Below, piece after piece: positions 15,596-31,053 of a stretch of 64,000 nt of DNA (within the stretch, counting starts at the first letter, position 1; every line of letters begins with the position of its first letter). The DNA is taken from IMG/VR virus record IMGVR_UViG_3300046692_000091, positions 186,001 to 250,000 of that record. One strand, written 5' to 3'. The translations under genes were made by a program, and so were the position numbers. Below the pieces are notes generated by a model that worked only from the letters and a program-made list of their open reading frames with translations, was not told the origin of the DNA and ran no database searches.

Positions 15596-15671
<76 letters not shown>

Positions 15672-15676
15672 TAATT

Positions 15677-15765
15677 TGGCGGAAGCATAGAGATTCGAAC
15701 TCTAGGGGCTGTTACACCCGACGGTTTTCAAGACCGTTGCCTTAAGCCATCTCGGCCATGCTTCC
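15677..15765 (-). tRNA. tRNA-Ser(TGA)
   Basis: Class II cloverleaf with long variable arm; loop CT-TGA-AA; CCA. Confidence 0.95.
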
Positions 15766-15780
15766 TGTGTTGCTTTTGTA

Positions 15781-15866
15781 TGGTGCGGACAGAGAGACTC
15801 GAACTCTCACGCCCTAAGGGCGCTGGAACCTAAATCCAGTGCGTCTACCAATTCCGCCATGTCCGC
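15781..15866 (-). tRNA. tRNA-Leu(TAG)
   Basis: Class II cloverleaf; CTGGA-TTTAGGT-TCCAG; CCA. Confidence 0.95.
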
Positions 15867-15868
15867 TG

Positions 15869-15890
15869 TATATTATTACACACCAAGTAT
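15869..15890 (-). promoter_or_regulatory. putative ncRNA-associated promoter motif
   Basis: ATACT-tggtgt-GTAATAATATA ends 2 nt before tRNA-Leu position 1. Confidence 0.7.
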
Positions 15891-15897
15891 TTTTTTA

Positions 15898-16629: not shown

Positions 16630-16692
16630 GTTGATTATCCTGGTTATATAAACATATAATTAGGTGATAGTCAAAATCCCCTTTGCATAATA

Positions 16693-16725
16693 CAGCATAA
16701 AGCTTCCCCAAAGGGAAGCACTATG
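16693..16725 (-). terminator. hairpin terminator-like element
   Basis: GCATAAA-GCTTCCC-CAAA-GGGAAGC-ACTATG on + strand, just downstream of tRNA-Leu(TAA). Confidence 0.75.
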
Positions 16726-16727
16726 TT

Positions 16728-16814
16728 TGGTGCGGGGAGCGGGATTCGAACCCAGCGAGCCTGTACAGGCGGCGGCTTTTAAGGCCGCTATGTATTCCGC
16801 TCCATCATCCCCGC
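16728..16814 (-). tRNA. tRNA-Leu(TAA)
   Basis: GCGGC-CTTAAAA-GCCGC anticodon arm; variable arm; TTCGAAT T-loop; CCA. Confidence 0.92.
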
Positions 16815-16827
16815 GTGTAACTAAATT

Positions 16828-17668
16828 CGGTCCCAGCATCCAGGATTCAAGCCCTGGTTATCAACGAACACGGGGTCGTTGGTAGATCGCCGCTGGGCGA
16901 GCTTTTCATCCCAATGTACAGCTTGAGCTGGTCGCGGCATTCCGCTAGAGGTCAAACCGTTCCGAAGGGTCTATCTACTTACTCGCCTTACAACGCTTCA
17001 GAGTGATGGAGGGCAAGTAAAAGAATCGGGGTAACCCACTATTCCCTTGGCAGCGGTCATGGTTTAAGATGACTTGCGGAATAGCTCGTTACATGGGTGC
17101 ACTATAGCGTACACGTCGCTGCCTTTCGGCCTTCTCATCGATTACCAGCCGCAGCTAGTTCTCTGTGTATGGCCCAGTAGCCTCTTTACGGGAGTCATCT
17201 ACTGGGAAGGTTACCACTACAGGACTATCACCTTCTATGGCCTGGTATTCCAACCAGTTCATGTAACCAAGACGGACATCTGATCCGTTGCAGCCGAGTC
17301 GTAACGCTTCTTCGGTATGGCGCCTTAGTAGTCAGGACTATCTGACCTTTGGGGTATCATGAGTACGGGCTTCGAGTTTCCCTGATATTCCACTATTCTA
17401 GTCTTTTGTGGAACGTCATTGGGTATCATTCGTAGATCTATACAAGTGTAACTCTGTGCCCTAGTCTGAGGATTAATCAGACACCTGTATTGATCCGAGC
17501 CTATCCCTTCCAGGCTAGGTCTTCACACTCCCACTTCTGGGGGAATGCGTATGTAAAAGTTTGATGGAACGATCCTCTACCTTCATCTATTCGGACTTAG
17601 GCGACCTTTTCAGCACAGTGGGGTGGAGTGCACTTACCCAACATCCTACCATGTCTTTCACATGCTCT
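16828..17668 (-). ncRNA. putative ~850-nt highly structured ncRNA
   Basis: No credible ORF; more than 10 visible helices, a GAAA tetraloop, a repeated loop motif; G-U pairs favour the minus strand. Boundaries approximate. Confidence 0.7.
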
Positions 17669-18343
17669 TTATTCGTGCGTAGTAGACAGCTCAGAGATAA
17701 TGCAGATCGAACCATCTTCAACCGGAGTGGTATCGGAGTAATCAACCTGATTGTAAACACCACCATGGAACTGGAAGGTTTCATATTTCCACGAACTATC
17801 TAGCTTCAGCACTGGGCAGACTGACTTACGACCTTGGCAAAGCACTGACGCCGATACGGAACCAGCAGCTGTGACATGTAAGCTAATCTTGAATGGTACA
17901 CCCAATGGAACGTCTTCTATTAGTGTAAAGTTGTTTATTAGTGCGTCATCGAAGTTAGCTCGGAAACCAGCTGTGATCTTCCCTTTATTCCAGAAGACTT
18001 TCAGTGGCGGAGTTGTAGCATCTTTGACATGGACTTGTGCAATTACCACTTTCTTAGCCGAGTTGACTTTAGTAACAGTCATCTCTTGGCGAGACCAGTG
18101 ATGTGCTGCGCTAGTAAGAGACCAATAAGCTGGTTCTTTCCATTCACAGCGTGTGCGATGTGTACTTTTGCTGGACGCCCCTAATGTGGGCGCAGAGAGT
18201 TGAATAGAACCGTCTTCCAATTGACTGACCACTTCTGGACATCTTACCAAGGCTTCCGAACCGAGGAGCTCCAATGCAACCGGATTCTCATCAGAGACCG
18301 GTAATGGAGTAGCAATCAAATAGTTACTGATATCAACGAACAT
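17669..18343 (-). CDS. polysaccharide lyase family 7 (alginate lyase-like)
   Basis: RTRCEWKE (RxExR-like), IAQVH (QIH-like) and FHGGVYNQ (YFKAGxYxQ-like) in the PL7 order. Confidence 0.85.
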   Translation of the reverse strand: MFVDISNYLIATPLPVSDENPVALELLGSEALVRCPEVVSQLEDGSIQLSAPTLGASSKSTHRTRCEWKEPAYWSLTSAAHHWSRQEMTVTKVNSAKKVVIAQVHVKDATTPPLKVFWNKGKITAGFRANFDDALINNFTLIEDVPLGVPFKISLHVTAAGSVSASVLCQGRKSVCPVLKLDSSWKYETFQFHGGVYNQVDYSDTTPVEDGSICIISELSTTHE

Positions 18344-18361
18344 TTTAACTCTCTTTTGAAA

Positions 18362-18437
18362 TGGCGGGCATCCAGGGAGTCGAACCCCGAACCGACGGAT
18401 TTGGAATCCGTTACTCTGCCAATTGAGCTAGACACCC
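18362..18437 (-). tRNA. tRNA-Trp(CCA)
   Basis: ACGGA-TTCCAAA-TCCGT anticodon arm; G73; CCA. Confidence 0.93.
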
Positions 18438-18444
18438 GAATGAA

Positions 18445-18528
18445 GAAAGGGAACAGGAATCGAACCTGCGTTTCCGGCTTGGTACTTATGGTGGCCACCG
18501 GTGTCCTAGGCCGCTAGACGACCCCTCT
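18445..18528 (-). ncRNA. tRNA-like RNA (Glu-type body) with 18-nt anticodon loop
   Basis: AGAGGGG-TC-GTCT-AGCGGCCT-AGGAC-A-CCGGT-[18 nt]-GCCGG-AAAC-GCAGG-TTCGATT-CCTGT-TCCCTTT-C; no CCA. Confidence 0.7.
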
Positions 18529-18646
18529 CACAAACTTGGTCGGGTTTTTGTTAAACCAGGCTAACCGATATCCCTGGTCCCTATCGAGTAAGCTCTAGGG
18601 GAGTCTTACTCTTACGCTCGTTTGGAGACTTAACGACAGTCTCTCG

Positions 18647-18668
18647 TATACTATTACACTGCCAGTAT
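18647..18668 (-). promoter_or_regulatory. putative ncRNA-associated promoter motif
   Basis: ATACT-ggcagt-GTAATAGTATA. Confidence 0.7.
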
Positions 18669-18675
18669 TTTGTTA

Positions 18676-19395
18676 TTACAACTCTAGTGGGCCAGGAGTA
18701 TAGTTACGTGTATATCTAGCGAAGTTACTAAGTCGAACTCTACCGTGATGCCCAGGAACAGCACGTACCGAACTACCGTTCGAATCACCAAATATAAGCG
18801 AGGTGATATTGATCAGTGCTGTTGGTGTAATCGTTTGCATAATGTAGGTTCCATTAGCTGCACCCTTAGCCAATGGGAGTCTCTGTCCATTACGGTAAAT
18901 AAAGATCTGACCATTCTTACATACAAATGCCCATCTACTCAAATTACTAACTAAGGCAGCTTTAGTGAATTGGGTATTATAACAATCGGCTGGTGCAGAG
19001 GCTGTGTTATCCCCCAAATGGAGTCTGTCTAAGAAACCAGAGTCACCATACCTGAAGAATAGTCCACGGCCAGCTGTTGAACTAGTCATTGAAAATTCAA
19101 GGGCATAGGCAGTAGGGGCGGTGTCGTTTATAGATGACCATTCTAATGTCCAGTTTATTGCACTTAAGTTGAGAGGGGCTGCAAATGTCATCACCTGTTT
19201 AGCTGCAACCGTTGGGTATTGCATACTGCCTTGCCCATCGATTAAATACCCAGCGTCAGCTATTGCTCCACCGGTATTGTTGGTGACGGTACCTAACCCA
19301 GATAGATCGGTGGCGGTAACTGGATCATACAAGAATAACACATCCCCTGTGTCCTCCACTGGTAAACTACCCCCAGCTAATAATGCCTCATACAT
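18676..19395 (-). CDS. LamG/concanavalin A-like lectin-fold protein, probably virion-associated
   Basis: LNLSAINWTLEW and GRVRLSNFARYTRNYTP; paralog of 15898..16629. Confidence 0.7.
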   Translation of the reverse strand: MYEALLAGGSLPVEDTGDVLFLYDPVTATDLSGLGTVTNNTGGAIADAGYLIDGQGSMQYPTVAAKQVMTFAAPLNLSAINWTLEWSSINDTAPTAYALEFSMTSSTAGRGLFFRYGDSGFLDRLHLGDNTASAPADCYNTQFTKAALVSNLSRWAFVCKNGQIFIYRNGQRLPLAKGAANGTYIMQTITPTALINITSLIFGDSNGSSVRAVPGHHGRVRLSNFARYTRNYTPGPLEL

Positions 19396-19434
19396 GACGG
19401 TGTGTCCTTTGGTTTATCAATTCAAACTATTGGG

Positions 19435-19460
19435 CGACATAAGAGTAGCCGAAGCTACTC
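19435..19460 (-). terminator. hairpin terminator-like element
   Basis: Minus strand GAGTAGC-TTCG-GCTACTC-TTATGTCG. Confidence 0.75.
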
Positions 19461-19653
19461 ATCCATAAAGAGTTCCCCAGTTAACAACTTTATTCAGTTG
19501 TTCTTGAGTAGGGATTTTATCTCTGACTCGTTGCTCGCATTCTTTATCGAATTGTTCCATTCTGATACGTGCTTCTTTGAGCCTTTCTTTTTGTTCATCT
19601 GTCAGTGGTTCTAATGCGTTACGTGAGAGTGCTATTAAAGTAGCCAGGCTCAT
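19459..19653 (-). CDS. microprotein paralog 5 (64 aa)
   Basis: ATGA-coupled; MSLATLI...PTQEQLNKVV. Confidence 0.75.
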   Translation of the reverse strand: MSLATLIALSRNALEPLTDEQKERLKEARIRMEQFDKECEQRVRDKIPTQEQLNKVVNWGTLYG

Positions 19654-19832
19654 ATCGTGATCAGCCTATTCAAGAGTTCTTGTGAAGGAGCCGTACGCGC
19701 GTGGCGCTCGTCAATCTCTTTGTTATATCCCCGCATTCTTTCATAGAACGCTATATTCCTTTTCTCACGCTCTTCGGCAGATATTGGTTCAGCTCTTTTA
19801 TTAGCCAGATCTATTAAAGCTTTCAGGCTCAT
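19650..19832 (-). CDS. microprotein paralog 4 (60 aa)
   Basis: ATGA-coupled; MSLKALI...PSQELLNRLITI. Confidence 0.75.
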   Translation of the reverse strand: MSLKALIDLANKRAEPISAEEREKRNIAFYERMRGYNKEIDERHARTAPSQELLNRLITI

Positions 19833-19996
19833 AATGAGATTACTCTGTTTAAGAGTTCTTCTGTAACTACTGAGGCTTTCCATTCCTTGGATAACCGGAT
19901 GTTAGTCTGTCTCATTCTTTCTTGGGCAACGGAAAGGCTTTCTTCATGTGTACCATTGCGCGTACGAGCATCTTCGATGAGTTGTTCAAGTGTCAT
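19829..19996 (-). CDS. microprotein paralog 3 (55 aa; not in ORF track)
   Basis: MTLEQLIEDARTRNGTHEESLSVAQERMRQTNIRLSKEWKASVVTEELLNRVISL; ATGA-coupled on both sides. Confidence 0.75.
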   Translation of the reverse strand: MTLEQLIEDARTRNGTHEESLSVAQERMRQTNIRLSKEWKASVVTEELLNRVISL

Positions 19997-20160
19997 AACG
20001 TACATCTCTTAGCTAAAAGTTCAGGGGTAACTTTCTGCTTCTCGAAGTCTTCAGCACACCGCTTATTAAAAGCAGCCGAACGTTTAGCATGGGCTGCCAT
20101 GCGTTCTTCTTTAGTGCCCATGCTATCTCTTACAGCTTTACACAGTGCCTCTAGACTCAT
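19993..20160 (-). CDS. microprotein paralog 2 (55 aa; not in ORF track)
   Basis: MSLEALCKAVRDSMGTKEERMAAHAKRSAAFNKRCAEDFEKQKVTPELLAKRCTL; ATGA-coupled. Confidence 0.75.
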   Translation of the reverse strand: MSLEALCKAVRDSMGTKEERMAAHAKRSAAFNKRCAEDFEKQKVTPELLAKRCTL

Positions 20161-20342
20161 AACGTACACCTTTTGTTCAAGATCTCAGGAGTCATTTGTT
20201 GATTTTTCAACTGTTGCTCCAGCCTCTGGTCCAGTTCAGACATATATTTCTTTTGATACTCTTGAAACTCTACCTGTGTCATACCCATAGCCGATGCAAT
20301 CCGATCTGCCATTCGTTCAATTAATCCCGGTGTCATTGCCAT
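20157..20342 (-). CDS. microprotein paralog 1 (61 aa)
   Basis: Ends MTPEILNKRCTL; TAATG-coupled to the upstream gene. Confidence 0.75.
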   Translation of the reverse strand: MAMTPGLIERMADRIASAMGMTQVEFQEYQKKYMSELDQRLEQQLKNQQMTPEILNKRCTL

Positions 20343-20605
20343 TAATCCACCTGTATCTGTACATAGACTCTTGTCACACCATGCACGAAGTCATAGTTGC
20401 TTACGTACTGTGCTTCATTCAAAGGCTTAGCACTGATCCATACTTGGATGATATCCTGTCCACACTTACGTAGGATCTTAGATACACGGTTCTGGATACG
20501 TCTACGACCTACTGCAGATATCTTAGGGAACTCACGCTTTAACATGAGTACCATGCGTTCATGGCATTCTTTGCCACGCTGTACTTCTGATGGGGTTCTA
20601 TGCAT
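20342..20605 (-). CDS. small basic hypothetical protein
   Basis: Likely ATG 20605 (TAATG overlap); track ORF 20342..20650. Confidence 0.65.
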   Translation of the reverse strand: MHRTPSEVQRGKECHERMVLMLKREFPKISAVGRRRIQNRVSKILRKCGQDIIQVWISAKPLNEAQYVSNYDFVHGVTRVYVQIQVD

Positions 20606-20859
20606 TAGTGCATCACCATTGAACCTTCGAGATGGCAAGCGCAACGACACAGTTGTGTTTCTGTATCGCCATCAACCACAATCAACAGACTAGGATAGAA
20701 TTGACGTTTAGCAAAAACTAGCTTACCCCATTCTGATTCTGTATCATCTCGTTCAATAGCTACAGCCGTTTCACTAAAGTTCTTTTTTAGGAAAGCTTCA
20801 CTCAGTGTGTGATCTTTATTGAGGTATTGACGTTCACTTCTTGCGCAACAAGGTACCAT
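20605..20859 (-). CDS. hypothetical protein
   Basis: SD AGAGGA; ATG 20859. Confidence 0.6.
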   Translation of the reverse strand: MVPCCARSERQYLNKDHTLSEAFLKKNFSETAVAIERDDTESEWGKLVFAKRQFYPSLLIVVDGDTETQLCRCACHLEGSMVMH

Positions 20860-20883
20860 TGGATATTCCTCTTTTGGATTAGA

Positions 20884-20916
20884 CAGCATAAAGGAGATCC
20901 GAAGATCTCCTTTATT
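20884..20916 (-). terminator. hairpin terminator after tRNA operon
   Basis: AAAGGAGATC-CGAA-GATCTCCTTT on + strand; minus strand reads TTCG loop then TTTATGCTG. Confidence 0.8.
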
Positions 20917-20920
20917 GAAT

Positions 20921-20996
20921 TGGCTCCGAGACTAGGATTCGAACCTAGGACCAACGCATTAACAGTGCGCGGCTCTACCAACTGAGCTATCTCGAA
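20921..20996 (-). tRNA. tRNA-Asn(GTT)
   Basis: GCGCA-CTGTTAA-TGCGT; G73; CCA. Confidence 0.93.
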
Positions 20997-20997
20997 A

Positions 20998-21074
20998 TGG
21001 CTCCATGACCTGGACTCGAACCAGGGACACCTTGATTAACAGTCAAGTGCTACTACCAACTGAGCTATCATGGA
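20998..21074 (-). tRNA. tRNA-Asn(GTT)
   Basis: CTTGA-CTGTTAA-TCAAG; G73; CCA. Confidence 0.93.
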
Positions 21075-21231
21075 ATGTACTGGGATGCCGGGCTTTACCG
21101 GATGATCGTTTTATCTAGACTCCCTCTCATGTCTAGCGATGCTTGTATCCCCAAGGATAGCCTAGGCTTGCAGCGAGCTAACGGTTACCCGTTTGGTGCA
21201 AGAGCTGATCTAGTCTACCGATGGAAATTCT

Positions 21232-21315
21232 TTATCTATCAGCGGGTCTTGAAGCCGCACACGGTCGATGGTATTTAGCCAACGATTGTCCTACCGATTG
21301 GACGATGATAGATAA
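21232..21315 (-). ncRNA. degenerate tRNA-like RNA with extended anticodon arm
   Basis: TTATCTATCA/TGATAGATAA closing stem; D-arm GTCC-AATCGGTA-GGAC; 7-bp arm TCGTTGG/CCATCGA; T-like arm GCGG-CTTCAAGAC-CCGC. Confidence 0.55.
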
Positions 21316-21439
21316 TGAAACGTTTACCTAGACAGTTCCCTAATAACTGATTACCCTGCGCGTCAGGTCGTTCGTTTATTAGGTAGGCGTGTATGCGACG
21401 CCTCGTTTTAGTTCTGCTCCTAAGAGCCTTCTGTCTAGC

Positions 21440-21519
21440 ACGCCCCTACCGGATTTGAACCGATGACCGATCAACGTATGGTTACCGTCGATTGCTCTAC
21501 CTAGCTGAGCTAAGGGGCG
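21440..21519 (-). ncRNA. tRNA-like RNA (Ile2/Met-type body) with 7-bp anticodon stem and 9-nt loop
   Basis: CGCCCCT-TA-GCTC-AGCTAGGTA-GAGC-A-ATCGACG-GTAACCATA-CGTTGAT-CGGTC-ATCGG-TTCAAAT-CCGGT-AGGGGCG-T; no CCA. Confidence 0.75.
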
Positions 21520-21523
21520 ACAA

Positions 21524-21608
21524 TGGTGGGTGCAGAAGGATTCGAACCTTCGAAGTCAGCGACGGGAGATTTACAATCTCCTGGGTTTGGCCACTCCCCA
21601 ACACACCC
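21524..21608 (-). tRNA. tRNA-Tyr(GTA)
   Basis: GGAGA-TTGTAAA-TCTCC; long variable arm; CCA. Confidence 0.93.
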
Positions 21609-21853
21609 GTATCAGCAGCAGCCGGTCCACCCGGTCATGAGGTTTTAACTCTTCTGTGCTGATAGTAAAACATTTGAAATTAGCTATGGAGAAAGGCGAC
21701 TCGTTTTATCTCCTGACTTGTACCCATGCACCCATTATTGATCCACTGGGCGACTCCTTTAGTGTGGATCGGGCTGTACCTTACCGTCGTTGTAAGCTAA
21801 TTTCAAAACTAACGAGGCAGTAGAAGTCCGAAGGACCAATACCACCTCTAAGA

Positions 21854-21930
21854 TGGCGCAACCAGCGGGACTCGAACCCGCGACCTCTTGCGTGACAGGC
21901 AAGCATTCTAACCAACTGAACTATGGCTGC
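21854..21930 (-). tRNA. tRNA-Asp(GTC)
   Basis: CTTGC-CTGTCAC-GCAAG; G73; CCA. Confidence 0.95.
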
Positions 21931-21933
21931 AAT

Positions 21934-22026
21934 AAACTAGTCGCGCTTTAACCCGCGTAAGCTAATAGCCCTGTTATGGCGGGCCGTCCAAATCAAGGGA
22001 GTTGAACCCGAGTTCTCGACTAGTTT
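21934..22026 (-). ncRNA. four-way-junction RNA with T-like and D-like arms in permuted order
   Basis: 10-bp closing stem AAACTAGTCG/CGACTAGTTT; arms GGG-TTCAACT-CCC, GCCC-9nt-GGGC, CGC-GGGTTAAA-GCG. Confidence 0.55.
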
Positions 22027-22033
22027 AAAAAAA

Positions 22034-22111
22034 TGGGGTGAGCTACGGGTCTCGAACCCGTGACCTCCAGGGTCACATCCTGGCACTCTAACCAACTGAG
22101 CTAAGCCCAAC
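22034..22111 (-). tRNA. tRNA-His(GTG)
   Basis: CCAGG-ATGTGAC-CCTGG; G-1:C73; CCA; atypical A32 and U1.C72. Confidence 0.85.
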
Positions 22112-23686: not shown

Positions 23687-24619
23687 TTAGAGACTGAATT
23701 CCCAAGCATCTGTTTGACCAGTGCCAGTTTTAATACCGCCGAAATAGAACATGCGATTACCCATGAATCCTGACCCGCCCATACCACGAGCTGCACCGGC
23801 ATTGGCTGCTAAAGCCGTCCATGTGTTAGTTCCAGGAGTGTAGTAATTAGTTCCGGCATAAGGGCCACCACCACTGATAATACCCCACAGTGAGATCAGA
23901 CGATTGTCAAAGGAATGGAAGCAACGACGGCAGCCATAAGCTGCAGGCATATCTGCTAGAGGGGACATTACTCCATTCGTGGTATCGTAAACGTACATCT
24001 TGTTAATGTATACGCTATTGTTACGCCCACCGATGAAATAGATCTTAGTACCAATTGCTGCAACACCTAAGTCTAGACGAGGCGTCTGGCCTGTAATAGT
24101 TAGCTCTGACCAAGTATCATCCAGTGTGTTGTATTTGTATTGGATGAACTTAGATGGGAGCTCTGGAGAAGCAGTGGTCGATGTCATGCCACCGAAGATG
24201 TAAATGTCAGTACCTACAGCACAACCATCCCCGAAAGCATTCGCGCCAGGCATAGATGCTTTAGTTGACCATGTACCAGCAACGAAGTCATAACACTGGT
24301 TTAGTCCAGTTGCTGCTGAACCAGCAGCATTGTGGCCACCGATCACATACATCTTATCTCCAACTACAACTGACGTATGACCGGATCTTGCAGTAGGTAG
24401 AGCAGGCAAGGCTGTCCATGCTGACCCATTCCAACGAGCGAATAATGTTTGTGGTACACTGGAGAAACCACCAATCCAATACAGTTGGCCACCCCATTGA
24501 ACAACATCATGGTGAAAACCAAAACGAGAACCACCCAGCTGTTTCCAAACAAATGCTTCTAAGTTTAATGGTGCCGCTGGCCCCGGTGTAGTCACCTGGC
24601 TTAATAATTGTTCCCACAT
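23687..24619 (-). CDS. Kelch-repeat beta-propeller protein
   Basis: Repeats LYWIGG, MYVIGG, IYIFGG, IYFIGG, MFYFGG with W near the repeat ends; SD AGGAAG before MWEQLL. Confidence 0.9.
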   Translation of the reverse strand: MWEQLLSQVTTPGPAAPLNLEAFVWKQLGGSRFGFHHDVVQWGGQLYWIGGFSSVPQTLFARWNGSAWTALPALPTARSGHTSVVVGDKMYVIGGHNAAGSAATGLNQCYDFVAGTWSTKASMPGANAFGDGCAVGTDIYIFGGMTSTTASPELPSKFIQYKYNTLDDTWSELTITGQTPRLDLGVAAIGTKIYFIGGRNNSVYINKMYVYDTTNGVMSPLADMPAAYGCRRCFHSFDNRLISLWGIISGGGPYAGTNYYTPGTNTWTALAANAGAARGMGGSGFMGNRMFYFGGIKTGTGQTDAWEFSL

Positions 24620-24652
24620 GTCGAATCTTCCTGATTTATAAAACATACGATA

Positions 24653-24682: not shown

Positions 24683-24781
24683 TCTAAGATGTGACAGCTA
24701 CAGAAGGATCGCTTCTAGAGGACTCTGTATCAGAGTACCCGGCGTGTAACTGGTTGGTGTTAAGGCGCGTACGTCCTCAAC
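24683..24781 (-). ncRNA. putative ~100-nt small RNA
   Basis: ORF-free stretch between the promoter motif (24782-24803) and the terminator; hairpins TTGAGG/CCTTAA and ACTCTG/CAGAGT. Confidence 0.55.
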
Positions 24782-24803
24782 TATACTATTACCCAGCCAG
24801 TAT
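24782..24803 (-). promoter_or_regulatory. putative ncRNA-associated promoter motif
   Basis: ATACT-ggctgg-GTAATAGTATA. Confidence 0.7.
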
Positions 24804-24807
24804 ATTC

Positions 24808-25566
24808 TTATTCAGCTTTGAACTCAGTCAATGAATGAGTCAACCATTTCAACAAACCATCTGCGGTAGGTTGCAGGATGTGAGTGAAGGCTTGGTTGTA
24901 ATCATAGAAAGCTGCTTCGAAGTCTTCACCGTATTTGTGGAGCTTCTTGAACATCTGATAAACTTCTGGTGGTGCATTAGTAGCTTCTGCTTCACGATAA
25001 CGTTTACCGCCTTCGTTATAATGCTTACCTTCAACTCCGAATGTTTTCCAGATGCGCATCAAGTGCTCATCCCAAAGTTCTTTCTTAAGCTCTACCAGAT
25101 CTAGGAACGTTTGAGCAATCTTCTTGATCGACCGCTTATCTAAAGGTGGTAGTGTTTGGTTAACACTAGGCTTAGCTATCTCTACTTTAGGAGTAGGGAC
25201 ATGGAAACTGAAATCCACTTCTTTATTGAAGCGAACAGCATGCTCAGGATCTTTCTCCCAACCATGAGCGAAGAGATAACCAATAACCTCGTTGACTGGC
25301 TTAAAGCCTTCTTCGAGGAACTGTTTCCCTTTTGCCTTATGCTCCTGGGCGTCACTACGGATAGTATCGATGATCGAATGATCAAACTTTGTTAGGTTAC
25401 CAGGGAAGGCAACCTTAACGGGTTTGTCAGAAAACGTTTGTTGCTTTAACCAACTATCATTCATGAATGTAGAACTGATAAGCTTCTTGGCATTCTGATA
25501 GTTGTGGTCTCCTACAACAGTAAGGTCTTTAGGCTTACCTCGGAAGAGACCACTTAATGCTTTCCC
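24808..25566 (-). CDS. third module of internal-head-type protein, probably reached by -1 frameshift
   Basis: GKALSGLFRGKPK...FMNDSWLKQQTF aligns with AIKALFKSKPK...LLNDSWLKQQTL; the track start (25623) is a TTG with a non-homologous leader. Confidence 0.75.
   Translation of the reverse strand, partial: GKALSGLFRGKPKDLTVVGDHNYQNAKKLISSTFMNDSWLKQQTFSDKPVKVAFPGNLTKFDHSIIDTIRSDAQEHKAKGKQFLEEGFKPVNEVIGYLFAHGWEKDPEHAVRFNKEVDFSFHVPTPKVEIAKPSVNQTLPPLDKRSIKKIAQTFLDLVELKKELWDEHLMRIWKTFGVEGKHYNEGGKRYREAEATNAPPEVYQMFKKLHKYGEDFEAAFYDYNQAFTHILQPTADGLLKWLTHSLTEFKAE
25504..25566 (-). other. candidate programmed -1 ribosomal frameshift signal
   Basis: In-frame G GGA AAG (25566-25560), spacer CATTAA, stem GTGGTCTC/GAGACCAC enclosing GGTAAG/CTTACT. 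Confidence 0.75.
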
Positions 25567-27407
25567 AACGAACCAAAGTCCTCGTTCGATACTTTCACAC
25601 CAGAGATCGATTTCTGAATCCAATGTAGCAGTGGCTCAGCTAATCCCTCTACTAGATCGTAGTAAGAAAACTGGTCAGTATAGAAGTGTTCGTCGAAGTA
25701 ATCCAGAATGGACTCTACTTCGCTGTGGAGTTGCTTCAGTTCTGATTGCAGTTCACCACGTGTATCCAGGATCAAATGCATGCGTGAACCATCCGGCCAC
25801 TTAGCCCCAGGACCAAGGGACTTCTTACCGTAATCCCAGCGGGCTTGCACTAGTTCGATGATCGCATTGGTTGCATCTTTGATCCCGGCAATATCCAACG
25901 CTGGTAACTCAACTTCAGCATTGTCTTCAGTAAAGTACTGTGGCTCAGAGTAGGCAACATCAAAGTCTAGATTGTCGTAAACTACGGTTTCATTAAAGGA
26001 CTGCACTTGTTCAAGGTTTGCTCCTTTGATGTTGCCACTGACAATCAGATCAACCCCTTGACGAATTGGATTAAACCATTTCTCTGACAACTTAGCATTG
26101 GTTTGAGCAACCTTGTCCAGTTCTTGGAGGATGCGTTTAACGAGCGGTTTATAATCACCCTTCATAGCTGCATCTGGGAACCGTACGGTTACATTACCTT
26201 CAGTAAGGGTTTGCTGTTTAAGCCAGCTGTCGTTCAACAGTGTCTTTTCAAGTTCCTTAAAGTGCTCTTTATCAATGCCGTGTTTAAGATCAAGTTCTTT
26301 AGGCTTGGATTTAAACAGTGCTTTAATAGCATCCACGAAACCTTCGTTAGATACGGTGATCTCTTCATTAGAGACTTTTTTGCCCCCTTTGAAAGAACGT
26401 TCCATGTAAACTACAGCAGCGACACACGCATTTTCGAATTGACGGAAGGCGGCCATCGATTCTGGAATTCTTGCCGGCATTTTACGAACTAACGCTTCCA
26501 ACAAAGTATTCCAAGCTTCGGAATTGTAGGATTCACTGTGACGGTCTTGACGTTGGACTTGGTATTGCGTTTCGTAAAAGTTATCCAGGAGATCATGGAT
26601 TTCATTATTCGTAGAAACGATGCGACTATGGTCTGCTTTCATCGCAGTGATGATAATGGTGGCTAGTTCCGTGGTTTCATCTGGAGACAATGCCGGACGA
26701 GCTTCATCAGTAGCTTTACCAGTAATCAGGTTCGTCTTGGCACGGGTAGGTTTCTTAGCGAGCTCCATCATTGGTTTGATATTAGCCACGGCTGCTTTGG
26801 CATCATCATACATCTTGTCGGTCAGCTTGGTTGGAGTCCAACTAGAAACTAATTTCGAGATCTGTTTAACGACGACCATCTGAGCTGCAATAATAGCTTC
26901 TTGGAAGGAATCGTTAATAGCTGCAGTTTCTTTAATCGAACCTGACAAGTTATCTAGTCCAATACGGTCTGCCAGATCGCCTACTTTAATATTGCCTTTA
27001 ATTGAGGTCTGTTTATTGACCCACTCTTTATTGGCAAAGGTGTTCTCGATGCTTTTGAAGATATGGCTGGCGTTGGCTTTAGCATTACCATCCAATTCCT
27101 CGAAGTCCTTACCGCGGTTATGGAACTTGAAAAACTTACGAACGTCTTCGATGATGCTCTCGTTTGATACTGAGATATCTTCGAACATGTGAGGATCTTG
27201 GATGGTATGCTCGGTACAATGCATCTCATCGTCGTCATTAGTAGAACGACCCCCGCCTGCTGGGGAGTCATCGCCGTGGTGTTGACGGTTGGTATCATCA
27301 CCATCTTCCGTAGGGACTTGTGGACGGTGGCCAGGGTCTTCCCGAGAATCATCTTCATGTAGTGGTGGTTCGCTCTCGGCGGCGCCCATCCATTCGTATA
27401 CGTTCAT
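25554..27407 (-). CDS. phiKZ-like internal head (ejection-type) protein with SNE sites
   Basis: SD GAAAGGAC; acidic leader; four VSNE sites; two homologous modules (TFANKEWVNKQ / TLLNDSWLKQQ). Confidence 0.75.
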   Translation of the reverse strand: MNVYEWMGAAESEPPLHEDDSREDPGHRPQVPTEDGDDTNRQHHGDDSPAGGGRSTNDDDEMHCTEHTIQDPHMFEDISVSNESIIEDVRKFFKFHNRGKDFEELDGNAKANASHIFKSIENTFANKEWVNKQTSIKGNIKVGDLADRIGLDNLSGSIKETAAINDSFQEAIIAAQMVVVKQISKLVSSWTPTKLTDKMYDDAKAAVANIKPMMELAKKPTRAKTNLITGKATDEARPALSPDETTELATIIITAMKADHSRIVSTNNEIHDLLDNFYETQYQVQRQDRHSESYNSEAWNTLLEALVRKMPARIPESMAAFRQFENACVAAVVYMERSFKGGKKVSNEEITVSNEGFVDAIKALFKSKPKELDLKHGIDKEHFKELEKTLLNDSWLKQQTLTEGNVTVRFPDAAMKGDYKPLVKRILQELDKVAQTNAKLSEKWFNPIRQGVDLIVSGNIKGANLEQVQSFNETVVYDNLDFDVAYSEPQYFTEDNAEVELPALDIAGIKDATNAIIELVQARWDYGKKSLGPGAKWPDGSRMHLILDTRGELQSELKQLHSEVESILDYFDEHFYTDQFSYYDLVEGLAEPLLHWIQKSISGVKVSNEDFGSLGKH

Positions 27408-27449: not shown

Positions 27450-27487
27450 CAACATAAGGCTTCCCCGAAGGGAAGCCAATATGCCGT
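27450..27487 (-). terminator. hairpin terminator-like element after nrdB
   Basis: CAACATAA-GGCTTCCC-CGAA-GGGAAGCC-AATATGCCG on + strand. Confidence 0.8.
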
Positions 27488-27494
27488 TAGTTCA

Positions 27495-28718
27495 CTACAT
27501 TGAGACTTGTTCTTTCGGCTGGTAATTATCCAACTTACTCATATCAAAACCTGGGATAGTGAACTCGAATACTGCATGTTCATTACGACGTGTTAACAGG
27601 TTCGTCATGTAGTCGCCTTTCTTCTCTTCCTGTGCAGAAGACTGAGTAGCTGACAACTGAATGTACTTGGTCATGTAAGGCAGTGGATTCTTCTCAGGCC
27701 ACTCAAATGGGAAACCAGCAATCTGTTCGAAGTCCCAGTCAAAGCGGAAGAAAATATCATCTTTAACATTCAAGAATTCTGCTGCGGCTTTAGCGTTGAA
27801 CAGAACCCATTGGATCAGAGACTTAGCAGTAACACCAGTCAGTTCACGACCTTCGGAGAATAGGTACAATGCCCATTCAACTTCAGTGCGGATGATTTCC
27901 CACAGCAGACGAACGATCTTGTCTTTGCATTGTTCGTAAGCAGTACGCCCACGTTCCGTTGCAAGCTCAGCGCGCAATACATGCTGACCGAACTGTGCAT
28001 GGATCTCGAATTCGTCTACAGCGATCTTCTGGACGGCTTTGGTGATCTGTTGGAACATACCGGTACGACCGATAGCGAAAGTTACAGCAAACGATGCCAT
28101 GAACTGAATACGCTCCAGGAAATAGAGTGCAATCAAGAACATGAAAATGTCGTTGTAAGTTTCTTGACAGTTCTCTACTTGACCCAGGCCATACTTGAGC
28201 GAGGTCTCATGAGCCTTAGCCATCACCTCACCGACGATCTTCATTCGGCTATGTGCTTCTTCTACCTTGAGGATCTCTTCACGGATTTCATCAGGGTCAT
28301 CGAACGAGCCACGAACGATCTCTGAATAAGTCAGTGCGTGTACACATTCGTTTTCGGAGATACGATTGTAACCAGTCCAGATCCGTCCATCGGTGATAAC
28401 GTTACCCAGTACGGTCACGATCGAACGAGAAGCTACGGAATCCGCTTCCCATTGCCATGCCAGGGTTTTGATCATCATGTCGTAGACAGACTTCTCGGCA
28501 TTCTTGAATTCGGCGTTACAAGTAAAGAAGTCGAACTCTAGTTCGTCCCAGTCCAAGTTACGTAGTCGTTTGTACAGTGCCCATGCTTCAGGGTGGTTGT
28601 GTGTGATCGAATCCAATAGACCCGGATCTTCACCCAAGATGATGTTGTAGGAACCGTAGTCCCCTTTATTCAGGTTAAAGATTTTTGGTGCGATATCAGC
28701 TACAGTGGCTACAGTCAT
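27495..28718 (-). CDS. nrdB: ribonucleotide reductase class Ia beta subunit
   Basis: WEADSVA, ENECVHALTY, YFLERIQFMASF, DEFEIH di-iron motifs; C-terminal AQEE..GDY. Confidence 0.93.
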   Translation of the reverse strand: MTVATVADIAPKIFNLNKGDYGSYNIILGEDPGLLDSITHNHPEAWALYKRLRNLDWDELEFDFFTCNAEFKNAEKSVYDMMIKTLAWQWEADSVASRSIVTVLGNVITDGRIWTGYNRISENECVHALTYSEIVRGSFDDPDEIREEILKVEEAHSRMKIVGEVMAKAHETSLKYGLGQVENCQETYNDIFMFLIALYFLERIQFMASFAVTFAIGRTGMFQQITKAVQKIAVDEFEIHAQFGQHVLRAELATERGRTAYEQCKDKIVRLLWEIIRTEVEWALYLFSEGRELTGVTAKSLIQWVLFNAKAAAEFLNVKDDIFFRFDWDFEQIAGFPFEWPEKNPLPYMTKYIQLSATQSSAQEEKKGDYMTNLLTRRNEHAVFEFTIPGFDMSKLDNYQPKEQVSM

Positions 28719-28767
28719 TTGTTTCTTCCAATTGGGGATTGAGGGTGGCCGAAGTCACCCGTTCTAT

Positions 28768-31053
28768 TTAGAGGGAGCATGCGCCACTAGCGCAACCAGC
28801 ATCTTCGGTTGTGTTGGAGAATGCAGATACGCCACCATTCAGGTTTGCACTGGCCACAATTTCAACGTTGTGGTAGTAGCGTGTCTTTTGACCACGGTAG
28901 TTCATGTACAACCAATCATCGATCAGTTCGTTCGAGTAGATGTGTTCTTGGCCTGGGAGAATACGACGGAACAGATCTGCAGACAAACCGCCATCCGTCC
29001 ATTTCTGGAAGACACAGTAACCATCGATCTGACGACGTGTTGGGATTTCCCAAGCCAGCTCATATTCGTACTCAGGGTTGTCGCCGTAAGGAGCAGCCCA
29101 TTGAATAGAGATAGCGTTATCGGTCTTGATGATGGTCAGAGCACGAACAGCGTAGAGGGAGTTTGCGCCACCCAGTGCTTTCGACGATGCTTCACCAGGC
29201 ATGAATGCAGCCAGTACCGAGTGAGCAATACCACCTTTAGCGATGATACGTGCACGCAGTGGTTCCCAGTCTTGCAGGTTCTTGAAGCCACCTTCAACGA
29301 TCGTATCAACGTTACGGTTGTAGGTATCCAGTGGGAGCCAGCCTTGTGGCCACTTGGTCTTGTGAATCCATGGAGCAACACCACGTTCATCTGCAATACG
29401 CAGAGAAGCATTGATGAGGCAATACATGTGCATTTCTGCAATGCGGTGCATCTCATGCAAACCTTCTTCGGACGAGTACTTCAGTTTCTTCTTGGCCATA
29501 TGGGTAGCCAGACCCATGATACCGACACCAGCAGAACGACGAGCCTTAGCAGTCATCTCCAGGTGAGGGAAAGCGTACTCGGAGTTGTCGATGCAATAGT
29601 CGATCATCTTCAACGCGTAGTACGTTACTTCTTGATAACGTTCTTGTGTGTGAATGTTGTTCACCACAATTGCAGCCAACGAGCAAGTAGCAATCTCACC
29701 ACGGCCATGGTCTTCTGCGGAGTGCAGGTCTTGCATCGAGTAGTATGGTGCAGTCGGTTGACAGATTTCCAGACACAGGTTCGAAGACAGGATCGGATCG
29801 AGAAACGGGGTGTGACGGTTGATCTCCGTCATGTTTGCCCAGTAGGCCGTACCGGTCTCGATACCTTCATTCAATGCAGTCAGAACGATCTTACGGGCAT
29901 TGACGTAGACTTTCTTGAAGGCTGGGTCTTTCTCATATTTCAGATACAGGTCGATGAACTTACCAACGTCACCACTGTAGAATGCTTCATGCAGATCCGG
30001 AGCGGTGAAAACGTTCCAGGTCATCATCTCTTTGTCGTTTGCTACCAACCACGCAGTAAAGGTGTTGGTCATCAACGCGTAGTGCAGGTCACGGTTCTTC
30101 TTGTCGTCTGTCGACTTAGGGTTACGTAGACGAGAGATGGTTTCTACTTCTGGATCGTACACGTTGTAGTACAACGAGATTGCGCCACCACGACCGTTCT
30201 GAGTGTTAGCACGAACAGCTTTACCCTGAGCAGCGATGTAAGGCAGTTTACCTTGGTGCTTGATCAGACCACCACGAACTGGGTCATTGATCGAACGAGT
30301 GATCAAGTTAACACCGATACCAGCAGCTTTCTGAGTCATCACGTTGGCGATGAAGTCACCTACGGCCAACGATACGCCGTTATCACCCGATGCGAACAAG
30401 CAGCACGAAGCAAAGCCACGGAGTACTGTACCCAGGTTTACATAATTCGGAGTTGGAGCAGACAGTTCACGTTGAGAGAACATCTCGTAGAAGTTACGGA
30501 CGTGTGTCATGCGGGATTCAACCGGCTCTTTCTCGGAGAGGGCCATAGCCATACGCATGTATGTGAACTGTGGAGTTTCGTATTCTTTTTTGGTTACCCG
30601 ATTCATCAGGGAATACTTCTGACGAATGTGGTGTAGTGCAAAGTGTGGCGAATCCATATCCAGATCATGTTTGAGCATCTTCTCAATCTGGGCGTATTCA
30701 CGAGTTGAGTAATCTAACTTCACCATGACTTTGTCTTTACGCATGCGAGTGTGCAACGTCTTCAGCGTTGGAACACCTTCAGTGCCATAGATCTTCTTAC
30801 GAATCAATACAGCATACAGTCGACCTGCTGCAACATAGGCGGACCAGGTACCAATATCCAACAGCTTATTGATCAGTGCTTGTTGGAAATCTTGAGATTG
30901 TACTTTCTCGGGCATTTCTGCTACTACGTCCATTACGACGCCAGCCCAATCGATGTCGATCAGGTTCTTCGAGAACCACTCACCCCAGCCGTTTGCTTTG
31001 TGTGGCATGTACGGTTCTTCGGTACCGTCCATCTTGATAAAAGTCTTGATCAT
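28768..31053 (-). CDS. nrdA: ribonucleotide reductase class Ia alpha subunit
   Basis: APTPNYVN, FASCCL, SSNLCLEI, TCSLAA, C-terminal CASGACSL. Confidence 0.96.
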   Translation of the reverse strand: MIKTFIKMDGTEEPYMPHKANGWGEWFSKNLIDIDWAGVVMDVVAEMPEKVQSQDFQQALINKLLDIGTWSAYVAAGRLYAVLIRKKIYGTEGVPTLKTLHTRMRKDKVMVKLDYSTREYAQIEKMLKHDLDMDSPHFALHHIRQKYSLMNRVTKKEYETPQFTYMRMAMALSEKEPVESRMTHVRNFYEMFSQRELSAPTPNYVNLGTVLRGFASCCLFASGDNGVSLAVGDFIANVMTQKAAGIGVNLITRSINDPVRGGLIKHQGKLPYIAAQGKAVRANTQNGRGGAISLYYNVYDPEVETISRLRNPKSTDDKKNRDLHYALMTNTFTAWLVANDKEMMTWNVFTAPDLHEAFYSGDVGKFIDLYLKYEKDPAFKKVYVNARKIVLTALNEGIETGTAYWANMTEINRHTPFLDPILSSNLCLEICQPTAPYYSMQDLHSAEDHGRGEIATCSLAAIVVNNIHTQERYQEVTYYALKMIDYCIDNSEYAFPHLEMTAKARRSAGVGIMGLATHMAKKKLKYSSEEGLHEMHRIAEMHMYCLINASLRIADERGVAPWIHKTKWPQGWLPLDTYNRNVDTIVEGGFKNLQDWEPLRARIIAKGGIAHSVLAAFMPGEASSKALGGANSLYAVRALTIIKTDNAISIQWAAPYGDNPEYEYELAWEIPTRRQIDGYCVFQKWTDGGLSADLFRRILPGQEHIYSNELIDDWLYMNYRGQKTRYYHNVEIVASANLNGGVSAFSNTTEDAGCASGACSL

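What the first reader, a model, noticed from the sequence alone, without database searches (positions are those of the whole stretch)
24808..27407. Candidate programmed -1 frameshift extends an internal-head protein from 617 to 866 aa
Seen: the upstream frame ends VSNEDFGSLGKH*, with codons TTG GGA AAG giving an in-frame G GGA AAG heptamer (25566-25560). A 6-nt spacer is followed by a 50-nt stem-loop with a perfect 8-bp base (GTGGTCTC/GAGACCAC). A -1 shift yields VSNEDFGSLGK-ALSGLFRGKPKDL, collinear with module 2 (VSNEGFVDAIKALFKSKPKEL). The downstream ORF has no ATG before its homologous region. Known: GGGAAAG is the lambda G/GT slippery site, and phage frameshifts are mostly described for tail chaperones and capsid or tail proteins. 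I know of none in phiKZ-type inner-head proteins. Inference: recoding sets the ratio of 2-module to 3-module products.
Basis: partly seen in the sequence, partly recalled or inferred. Interest (0 to 1): 0.9.

Follow-up and report, generated by a model that had tools for sequence, protein, structure and literature searches.

The report
Conserved -1 frameshift in jumbo-phage head protein
A giant Pseudomonas-type phage makes the last module of a head-packaged, multi-module protein only when the ribosome slips back one base at a conserved signal. The same signal sits in at least ten other related phage genomes, so this is a real recoding site that had not been annotated, not a sequencing error.

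Summary
The frame break is real: 11 distinct genomic contexts share it, including the cultured Pseudomonas phage D6. All 11 keep G_GGA_AAG, one variable sense codon, TAA/TGA, and a hairpin starting 6 nt downstream. All also carry a 245-250-aa module (M3) in the -1 frame; two contigs end inside it.

Purifying selection switches from the 0 frame to the -1 frame exactly at the heptamer. No -1-frame start codon is conserved, and 9 of 11 have a -1-frame stop 6-30 nt upstream.

The hairpin is more stable than synonymous recoding allows: 0 of 500 resamples matched it in 7 of 11 lineages. It is not significant in sister lineages where M3 is fused in frame and the heptamer is gone. A GAGG lies 13 nt upstream in 10 of 11.

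The gene is the syntenic homologue of phiKZ gp303 / 201phi2-1 gp455. These are head-packaged, protease-processed proteins, not the gp92-97 inner-body family.

Every module boundary carries V-S-N-E, which fits the prohead-protease motif. I infer that frameshifting sets how much M3 is loaded relative to the other modules.

It is a new member of a known kind. No trans-frame protein has been observed.

The parts
25554..27407 (-). ORF1, the 0-frame product: 617 aa plus TAA. It consists of an N-terminal acidic/Pro-rich leader, module M1, module M2 and an 8-aa tail, DFGSLGKH.
   Evidence: An HMM of its homologues hits 201phi2-1 gp455 (E = 3e-28) and phiKZ gp303 (E = 3.7e-21). PHROG 24656 'virion structural protein' matches at E = 4.7e-16.
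27159..27407 (-). N-terminal leader (aa 1-83) ending in ISVSNE|S. It is a putative propeptide or capsid-targeting region (inferred).
   Evidence: SNE at aa 81-83. An [ST][VAC]SNE|SII boundary is conserved in most homologues. Jumbo-phage prohead proteases remove N-terminal propeptides at S/A/G-X-E (PMC5694885; PMC10052503).
26364..27158 (-). Module M1 (aa 84-348).
   Evidence: BLASTP module mapping in 26 homologues.
25581..26342 (-). Module M2 (aa 356-609). It follows TVSNE| (26351-26343) and ends in KVSNE| (25589-25581).
25580..25583 (-). GAGG, a Shine-Dalgarno-like element 13 nt 5' of the heptamer. It is formed by the Glu codon of SNE plus the next G.
   Evidence: GAGG occurs at 10/11 frameshift sites and at 0/24 other xNE boundaries. 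GAG is only 26% of Glu codons in these genes. Its role as a stimulator is inferred.
25560..25566 (-). Slippery heptamer G_GGA_AAG in the 0-frame register.
   Evidence: Invariant in 11 distinct contexts. GGA is the rarest Gly codon in these genes, at 10%.
25554..25556 (-). 0-frame stop TAA, one codon after the heptamer.
   Evidence: TAA or TGA sits at this position in 11/11. The intervening codon varies (H/R/L/P in the 0 frame) but the overlapping -1 codon always encodes Ala.
25504..25553 (-). 50-nt stem-loop starting 6 nt after the heptamer.
   Evidence: MFE -22.1, z = -3.8. It is more stable than synonymous recodings of the same peptide: 0/500 in 7 of 11 lineages. It is not significant in the fused-in-frame relatives or at the paralogous M1/M2 boundaries. 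The outer stem is 92.7% paired, with no double compensatory change.
24808..25560 (-). Module M3 in the -1 frame: 250 aa plus TAA. It is reached by a -1 slip and has no conserved start codon of its own.
   Evidence: AlphaFold model pLDDT 85, pTM 0.77; residues 1-17 are unstructured, followed by a helical module. BFVD matches are jumbo-phage virion proteins.
25621..25623 (-). TTG in the -1 frame, 57 nt upstream of the heptamer. This is the start that ORF finders pick. It is not conserved.
   Evidence: It is present only in WIN and L016. In 9/11 contexts a -1-frame stop lies 6-30 nt upstream of the heptamer.

Best explanation
This is a conserved programmed -1 ribosomal frameshift.

Ribosomes translating the gp303-like head-protein gene reach G_GGA_AAG, which lies 7 codons after the last V-S-N-E module boundary. 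A fraction of them slip back one base, so that tRNA-Gly moves from GGA to GGG and tRNA-Lys from AAG to AAA.

**The likely stimulators.** A hairpin starts 6 nt downstream, a GAGG lies 13 nt upstream, and a 0-frame stop follows one codon later.

**The two products.** Non-shifted ribosomes terminate and give leader-M1-M2 plus an 8-residue tail. Shifted ribosomes continue into M3 and give an 866-aa chain.

**Inferred biology.**
- The chain is targeted into the prohead through its N-terminal region.
- The phiKZ-type prohead protease (S/A/G-X-E specificity) cuts it at the V-S-N-E boundaries.
- The shift frequency therefore sets the copy number of free M3 relative to M1 and M2.
- M3 has no start codon because it can only be loaded as a fusion.

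**Shown:** the sequence signal, its conservation, the frame-specific selection, the hairpin's excess stability, and homology to gp303/gp455.

**Inferred:** that the slip actually occurs, its efficiency, the stimulatory roles of GAGG and the hairpin, the cleavage at SNE, and the packaging logic.
For: 1. **Same cassette in 11 distinct contexts.** M3 DNA identity is 64-77% between the main lineages.
2. **The break is reproduced independently.**
   - A second assembler gives an identical contig.
   - A contig from another sample spans the site with 0 differences.
   - Two ~94%-identical relatives show no gap there.
3. **Selection switches frame at the heptamer.**
   - Synonymous fraction of differing codons, 30 codons upstream: 0.31 in the 0 frame against 0.07 in the -1 frame.
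   - Synonymous fraction, 50 codons downstream: 0.57 in the -1 frame against 0.13 in the 0 frame.
   - The -1 frame has no stops downstream, against 42 in the 0 frame.
   - The codon after the heptamer reads H/R/L/P in the 0 frame, but GCA/GCG/GCT/GCC (all Ala) in the -1 frame.
4. **No conserved initiator.** The first ATG/GTG/TTG in the -1 frame lies anywhere from +33 to +279 nt. In 9/11 contexts a -1-frame stop lies 6-30 nt before the heptamer. Protein conservation begins at residue 1 after the slip.
5. **GGA is retained 11/11**, although it is only 10% of Gly codons.
6. **Hairpin against a synonymous-codon null.** 0/500 in 7 lineages and p = 0.016-0.12 in the other four. The controls are not significant.
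7. **GAGG** occurs at 10/11 frameshift sites and 0/24 other boundaries.
8. **In-frame fused relatives.** In L005 the residue count across the junction matches the -1 product. L005 and L011 have lost the heptamer and the significant hairpin. Together with P0027, P0028 and P0030 they form one group close to the window's M3.
9. **Homology and synteny** with phiKZ gp303 and 201phi2-1 gp455.
   - gp455 was identified in the virion by mass spectrometry.
   - gp175-type cleavages have been mapped to gp303.
10. **SNE at every module boundary** in 26 homologues, and in gp303 and gp455. This fits the S/A/G-X-E motif with Val at P4.
Against: - No protein, ribosome-profiling or reporter data exist for any member.
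- Only assembler contigs could be laid, not raw reads, so minority indel variants cannot be excluded.
- The outer stem shows only one-sided changes (G-C to G-U) and no compensatory double changes. Its arms also encode conserved residues (SGLF and VGDH).
- The lineages are related, so the 10/11 and 11/11 counts are not independent trials.
- Host tRNA-Lys and tRNA-Gly repertoires were not examined. The 11 phage tRNAs in the window include neither.
- Cleavage at SNE and head location rest on homology to gp303/gp455 and on published work, not on data for this phage.
Confidence: 0.88

Rival explanations
1. Sequencing or assembly indel: the true gene is one continuous 867-codon ORF.
For: Some relatives (L005, L011, P0027, P0028, P0030) do have M3 in frame, with one extra nucleotide in the junction of L005. 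Raw reads could not be inspected, only contigs.
Against: The same break occurs in 11 distinct contexts from independent projects and technologies, including a cultured isolate. A -1-frame stop sits just upstream in 9/11. A second assembler and a second sample reproduce the sequence exactly.
Confidence: 0.01
2. Two separate genes: M3 is initiated independently at an internal or non-canonical start, as gene callers annotate it, and the heptamer is incidental.
For: Gene callers predict 198-271-aa products from various starts. The window has a TTG at 25623 and an ATG 102 nt into M3.
Against: The predicted starts differ in every lineage, from +33 to +279 nt, and lack SD sequences. The 11-93 codons upstream of them are conserved at the protein level in the -1 frame, with mostly synonymous change. 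The heptamer, adjacent stop, hairpin and GAGG would be left unexplained.
Confidence: 0.05
3. Decay: M3 is a dead remnant cut off by a frameshift mutation in an ancestor.
For: gp303 is non-essential in phiKZ. Psa21, RVTF4 and many other homologues lack M3 altogether.
Against: M3 has no stops over 245-250 codons in every lineage whose contig covers it. The synonymous fraction of differing codons in its first 50 codons is 0.57, and 121 of 250 residues are invariant among six lineages. The break point is identical across lineages whose M3 DNA is only about 65% identical.
Confidence: 0.02
4. Slippage at the RNA level: the polymerase adds a base at GGGAAAG and so makes a minority in-frame mRNA.
For: The result would be the same protein. 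phiKZ-like phages use their own unusual RNA polymerases.
Against: From established knowledge, known transcriptional slippage needs runs of about 7-9 or more identical bases, and here the runs are 3+3. The in-register X_XXY_YYZ form, the 6-nt spacer to a hairpin and the GAGG at 13 nt are hallmarks of ribosomal slippage. No RNA data were available.
Confidence: 0.03

Closest known systems
Phage lambda G/GT tail-assembly-chaperone frameshift
   Same: Identical slippery heptamer, G_GGA_AAG, and a -1 tandem slip that yields a C-terminally extended minor product at a fixed ratio (established knowledge: Levin et al. 1993; Xu et al. 2004).
   Different: The gene family and virion compartment differ: this is a head-packaged gp303-like protein beside the ribonucleotide reductase genes, not a tail chaperone upstream of the tape-measure gene. 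Here there is also a conserved hairpin, an SD-like element, and a stop one codon after the site.
E. coli dnaX tau/gamma -1 frameshift signal
   Same: The architecture is tripartite: an upstream SD-like sequence (spacing of roughly 10-14 nt), a heptamer ending in AAG, and a stem-loop 6 nt downstream (established knowledge: Larsen et al. 1994, 1997).
   Different: In dnaX the shift truncates the protein, because the -1 frame stops at once. Here the shift extends it by 250 aa. The heptamer is G_GGA_AAG, not A_AAA_AAG. The stimulatory roles are inferred, not measured.
phiKZ gp303 / 201phi2-1 gp455 head proteins
   Same: Homologous by HMM (E = 3.7e-21 and 3e-28), in the same position after the RNR genes, with V-S-N-E boundaries. 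Both are head-located and proteolytically processed according to the literature.
   Different: Both are annotated as single uninterrupted genes, and no close M3 relative is found in either genome. Neither locus was scanned for the cassette. Frameshift-dependent M3 was found only in the Psa21/D6-like group.
Retroviral gag-pol (polyprotein + -1 PRF + viral protease)
   Same: The logic is the same: a capsid-targeted precursor whose distal part is made only after a -1 shift and is then released by the virion protease, which fixes the stoichiometry.
   Different: This is an analogy only. There is no homology, and cleavage and packaging here are inferred. M3 is a helical module of unknown function, not an enzyme.
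T7 gene 10A/10B capsid frameshift and the Listeria phage A118/PSA capsid and tail frameshifts
   Same: These are phage structural proteins with C-terminal extension by recoding (established knowledge).
   Different: They affect shell or tube subunits, not packaged internal proteins. They use different slippery sites and, for PSA, a different direction (+1).

Membership tests
-1 programmed ribosomal frameshift site (bacterial tandem-slippage type) | X_XXY_YYZ heptamer in the 0-frame register | tested here: met
   G_GGA_AAG at 25566-25560, in register. Invariant in 11 contexts.
-1 programmed ribosomal frameshift site (bacterial tandem-slippage type) | The -1 ORF is under purifying selection from the site onward and has no initiator of its own | tested here: met
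-1 programmed ribosomal frameshift site (bacterial tandem-slippage type) | The signal is conserved beyond what the encoded amino acids require | tested here: met
   GGA is 10% of Gly codons but is used in 11/11. The heptamer is lost in L005 and L011, where M3 is fused in frame.
-1 programmed ribosomal frameshift site (bacterial tandem-slippage type) | Downstream RNA structure 5-9 nt from the heptamer | tested here: met
   The hairpin starts at +6 nt in all 11. The synonymous-codon null gives 0/500 in 7 lineages, and controls are negative. Compensatory covariation was not seen, so the helix is supported by stability and position, not by covariation.
-1 programmed ribosomal frameshift site (bacterial tandem-slippage type) | A trans-frame protein is produced at a defined ratio | not testable with these tools
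   No proteomic, ribosome-profiling or reporter data exist for this phage group. The D6 paper reports only SDS-PAGE and does not mention a frameshift.
phiKZ gp303 / 201phi2-1 gp455 head-protein family | Sequence homology | tested here: met
   HMM of 26 ORF1 homologues: gp455 at 85.6 bits, gp303 at 62.2 bits. BLASTP of ORF1 against gp303: E = 1.2e-10. tblastn of P0033 against phiKZ: E = 3e-9.
phiKZ gp303 / 201phi2-1 gp455 head-protein family | Conserved genomic position downstream of the ribonucleotide reductase genes | tested here: met
   Window: RNR alpha at 28768-31053 and RNR beta at 27495-28718, then this gene. phiKZ and 201phi2-1. The related loci.
phiKZ gp303 / 201phi2-1 gp455 head-protein family | Present in the virion head and cleaved by the prohead protease at S/A/G-X-E | not testable with these tools
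   V-S-N-E motifs are present at all boundaries. Head location and cleavage are known only for gp303 and gp455, from the literature and record notes.
phiKZ inner-body / 'internal head protein' paralogue family (gp92-97, 153, 162, 163; PF12699) | PF12699 C-terminal domain, or homology to gp92-97 | tested here: not met
   No Pfam hit. The ORF1 HMM against phiKZ 60-144 kb gives gp95 as its best hit at only 6.6 bits, E = 0.013 in a set of 101 ORFs. D6's annotated internal head proteins are other genes, ORFs 312-314.
Lambda-type tail assembly chaperone G/GT | A small chaperone gene pair immediately upstream of the tape-measure gene | tested here: not met
   The neighbours are RNR genes, a Kelch-repeat gene and DUF1353. 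The product is homologous to head proteins.

The most novel reading that the evidence does not exclude
The gp303 family may be a cargo-delivery polyprotein. One N-terminal targeting leader would carry one to four interchangeable helical modules into the prohead, and the prohead protease would release each at V-S-N-E. In the D6/window group, a dnaX-like -1 frameshift cassette travels with module M3 as a portable unit and doses it sub-stoichiometrically. This would be a gag-pol-like strategy inside a bacteriophage head, with natural fused and frameshift variants available for comparison.
Probability: 0.45. Interest if true: 0.72.

Novelty: new member of a known kind. Interest (0 to 1): 0.6.

Why it matters
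Outside tail-assembly chaperones, few conserved recoding sites are known in phages. I found none reported for jumbo (phiKZ-like, nucleus-forming) phages in four full-text searches.

- **A clean natural series.** The same cassette sits behind one, two or three upstream modules, and sister lineages have the module fused in frame and have lost the signal.
- **A culturable test system.** Phage D6 on P. syringae DC3000 carries the site.
- **An annotation fix.** In D6 and in metagenomic jumbo phages, M3 is currently called as a truncated 'hypothetical protein'.
- **A rule for head loading.** It suggests how proteins packaged in jumbo-phage heads are dosed and loaded.

Tried and rejected
- Megablast of the locus against 50,697 phage records: no match.
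- Pfam: nothing for either piece beyond a sub-threshold AprA hit.
- ESM Atlas: best score 0.61, uninformative.
- Rfam at E <= 1 around the site: only a chance sub-threshold miRNA hit, no known frameshift element.
- Foldseek against PDB: only generic helical bundles, all E > 0.07.
- ORF1 HMM against phiKZ gp69-gp140, including internal head proteins gp92-97: not significant. Membership of the inner-body family is rejected.
- The metagenome-contig scan added only one new locus. A second IMG/VR scan with the alignment gave the same 7 loci.
- Classical covariation in the outer stem: none.
- The sigma-70 promoter and terminator scan shows no internal promoter before M3. It is uninformative anyway, because these phages use their own RNA polymerases.
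- The heptamer count in the window is at chance level.
- The Thomas 2012 paper with the gp303 cleavage sites is not held. The supplements of PMC10449902 gave no site coordinates.
I removed it and did not send it elsewhere.
- Read laying returned assembler contigs only, so read-level heterogeneity could not be assessed.
Full report
**1.

On the - strand an ORF runs from ATG 27407 to TAA 25556-25554 (617 aa) and ends ...VSNEDFGSLGKH. The codons TTG GGA AAG place G_GGA_AAG at 25566-25560 in the X_XXY_YYZ register. After the 6-nt spacer CATTAA, a 50-nt hairpin (25553-25504) folds at -22.1 kcal/mol, z = -3.8 against dinucleotide shuffles. Reading from 25560 in the -1 frame gives ALSGLFRGKPKDL... 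for 250 aa, to TAA at 24810-24808. This module (M3) is 24.6% identical to module 2 of ORF1 over 260 aa, E = 3e-15. The heptamer by itself is not unusual: 5 copies in 64 kb against 6.1 expected.

**2. The break is real and conserved**

There is no near-identical DNA in GenBank phages. tblastn finds Pseudomonas phages D6, Psa21 and RVTF4. D6, a cultured isolate, has exactly the same arrangement: GTG GGA AAG CGT TAA GTGGTCTC..., with M3 homology starting at the first -1 codon.

Further contexts came from IMG/VR, one metagenome scan, two protein searches and seven contig look-ups. Together they give 11 distinct contexts:
- WIN (identical to L004)
- D6 (L001)
- L006 (identical to L007, L008 and L012)
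- L009 (identical to L014)
- L010, L013, L015, L016, L017, L018 and L019

All carry GGGAAAG, one sense codon, TAA or TGA, a GTGGTYT... hairpin, and M3 in the -1 frame; the L018 and L019 contigs end inside M3. M3 DNA identity between the main lineages is 64-77%.

Logan's independent assembly of the likely source run is identical over the whole gene. A 311-nt contig from a different sample and study spans the site with no differences. Two ~94%-identical relatives align through the site without gaps. Only contigs were available, not reads.

**3. Frame-specific selection**

| Region | 0 frame | -1 frame |
|---|---|---|
| 30 codons upstream: synonymous fraction of differing codons | 0.31 | 0.07 |
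| 30 codons upstream: stops across the 11 sequences | 0 | 34 |
| 50 codons downstream: synonymous fraction of differing codons | 0.13 | 0.57 |
| 50 codons downstream: stops across the 11 sequences | 42 | 0 |

The codon after the heptamer is CAT, CGT, CTC, CTT or CCT. That reads H/R/L/P in the 0 frame. In the -1 frame it is GCA, GCG, GCT or GCC, all Ala. The next -1 codon is TTA, CTA or CTG, all Leu. Protein conservation of M3 begins at residue 1 after the slip.

**4. No independent start**

The first ATG/GTG/TTG in the -1 frame lies at +33 to +279 nt, depending on lineage, and has no SD sequence. In 9 of 11 contexts a -1-frame stop lies 6-30 nt upstream of the heptamer. Gene callers accordingly predict products of 198-271 aa from inconsistent starts. 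The GTG directly after the stop is in the 0 frame and opens only 13 codons.

**5. The signal elements**

- **Heptamer codons.** GGA is the rarest Gly codon in these genes (10%) and GTG is 14% of Val codons, yet the heptamer is invariant.
- **Hairpin.** I resampled synonymous codons while keeping the -1 peptide. The native 54-nt segment is more stable than all 500 resamples in 7 of 11 lineages, and p = 0.016-0.12 in the other four. The upper helix differs between lineages, but the base and position are fixed.
- **Hairpin controls.** The same segment in two relatives where M3 is fused in frame gives p = 0.16 and 0.88. The paralogous M1/M2 boundaries give -4.4 to -9.8 kcal/mol, not significant.
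- **Outer stem.** It is 92.7% paired but shows only one-sided changes, so covariation does not prove it.
- **GAGG.** It lies 13 nt upstream of the heptamer in 10/11 contexts and at 0/24 other xNE boundaries. GAG is 26% of Glu codons.
- **Layout.** The arrangement (SD-like element, heptamer ending in AAG, 6 nt, hairpin) resembles E. coli dnaX. The heptamer itself is that of lambda G/GT. Both comparisons rest on established knowledge.
- **Rfam.** It holds no matching family.

**6. Natural fused variants**

L005, L011, P0027, P0028 and P0030 encode leader-M1-SNE-M3 in one frame. In L005 the junction reads FSSLESKLGGFFRHKPKD, against FGSLGK-ALSGLFRGKPKD for the -1 product. The two have the same number of residues, L005 has one more nucleotide, and its heptamer is gone.

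In an M3 tree with M2 as the outgroup side, the M3 clade splits into three groups, and their branching order is unresolved. The fused forms make up one of them, on a short branch (0.018) like that of the window's own group (0.074). The frameshift state is found in both of the other groups, which are the deepest-diverged M3 lineages. One loss of the signal is therefore the most parsimonious reading.

**7. What the gene is**

- **Initial searches.** Pfam finds nothing. PHROG 24656 'virion structural protein' matches ORF1.
- **Sequence link to phiKZ.** A distant homologue, P0033, links by tblastn to phiKZ gp303 (E = 3e-9) and 201phi2-1 gp455. An HMM of 26 ORF1 homologues scores gp455 at 85.6 bits and gp303 at 62.2 bits.
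- **Synteny.** Both genes sit just after the RNR genes, as this gene does.
- **Published evidence on the homologues.**
  - gp455 was identified in virions by mass spectrometry (record note).
  - gp175-type cleavages were mapped to gp303 (PMC10449902).
- **Not the inner-body family.** It is not the PF12699 inner-body family gp92-97.
- **Fold.** The AlphaFold model of M3 has pLDDT 85 and pTM 0.77. Residues 1-17 form an unstructured linker, followed by long helices and two short strands. It has no PDB relative. It matches virion proteins of Noxifer, Psa21 and PS119XW, and uncharacterized proteins of PhiPA3 and of Klebsiella and Erwinia jumbo phages.

**8. Architecture and inferred logic**

Every module boundary in every homologue carries [V/T/I]-[S/A/G]-N-E, and so do gp303 and gp455. 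This fits the prohead-protease motifs:
- S/A/G-X-E in phiKZ and S/A/G/T-X-E in 201phi2-1 (PMC5694885).
- Val preferred at P4 and Ser at P1' in SPN3US (PMC10052503).

The frameshift cassette always starts 7 codons after such a boundary. It is found behind one module (L013, L017), two modules (WIN, L006, L009, L019), three modules (D6, L010, L015, L016) or a different module (L018). It therefore behaves as the 5' end of a portable M3 unit.

My inference is as follows. The chain enters the prohead through its N-terminal part. The protease frees the modules, and the 0-frame tail DFGSLGKH is discarded. Shift efficiency then fixes the dose of M3. M3 lacks a start codon because it must be made as a fusion to be loaded. 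None of this is shown for this phage.

**9. Rivals**

- An indel error is excluded by the independent replication.
- Independent initiation and pseudogene decay conflict with sections 3-5.
- RNA-level slippage is unlikely with 3+3 runs, but no RNA data exist.

**10. Novelty**

Four full-text searches found no description of this site or of any programmed frameshift in jumbo-phage head proteins. The D6 paper does not mention it, and the record annotates two separate hypothetical proteins. Among 50,697 GenBank phage records, only D6 carries a close relative of M3.

The mechanism is of a known kind; the gene family and context are new.

Noticed in passing
window 15596-22110 (- strand): There is a cluster of 11 tRNA genes: Thr x2, Ser, Leu x2, Trp, Asn x2, Tyr, Asp and His. 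None is for Lys or Gly, the two tRNAs that would slip at the heptamer.
   Followed up: no
window 23687-24646 (- strand): A 319-aa Kelch-repeat beta-propeller protein (PF24681, E = 1e-33; Kelch_1, E = 3e-27) lies between M3 and the DUF1353 gene. In D6 and in all related contigs covering that stretch, DUF1353 follows M3 directly, and Psa21 has an unrelated 235-aa virion protein there. It therefore looks like a lineage-specific insertion.
   Followed up: partly
window 27458-27477 (- strand), between RNR beta and the gene: A GC-rich hairpin, GGCTTCCC-TTCG-GGGAAGCC, is followed by a T-rich tail and looks like a terminator. Near-copies of this ~30-nt element occur at several other places in the same phage contig and in relatives' contigs (table 8). 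It may be a repeated intergenic terminator or regulatory element.
   Followed up: no
window ~24740-24805; L001 6411-6460; L002 4810-4880: The intergenic sequence just after the gene is conserved between the window, D6 and Psa21, even though Psa21 lacks M3. It reads AATACTG..(T/A)AATAGTAT(A)GTT(G)AGGAC...CTCAACACC. The gene's 3' boundary is therefore fixed while modules come and go.
   Followed up: no
L001 3001-5673; L010, L015, L016; L003; L018: The family shows module shuffling. D6, L010, L015 and L016 carry an extra ~270-280-aa middle module. RVTF4 and P0019 have an unrelated C-terminal module. L018 has yet another module before the frameshift cassette. P0021 and P0022 stop after M1. All joints are at the SNE motif.
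   Followed up: partly
window 27495-31053 (- strand): Class Ia ribonucleotide reductase alpha (761 aa) and beta (407 aa) genes lie immediately upstream. This is the same synteny as phiKZ gp305/306 followed by gp303.
   Followed up: yes
L001 5808-6410 (GenBank OQ363659, WDS62025.1): The D6 record annotates M3 as a 200-aa hypothetical protein. The annotated CDS begins at a GTG 147 nt after the heptamer and omits 47 conserved codons. The record needs a ribosomal-slippage join.
   Followed up: yes
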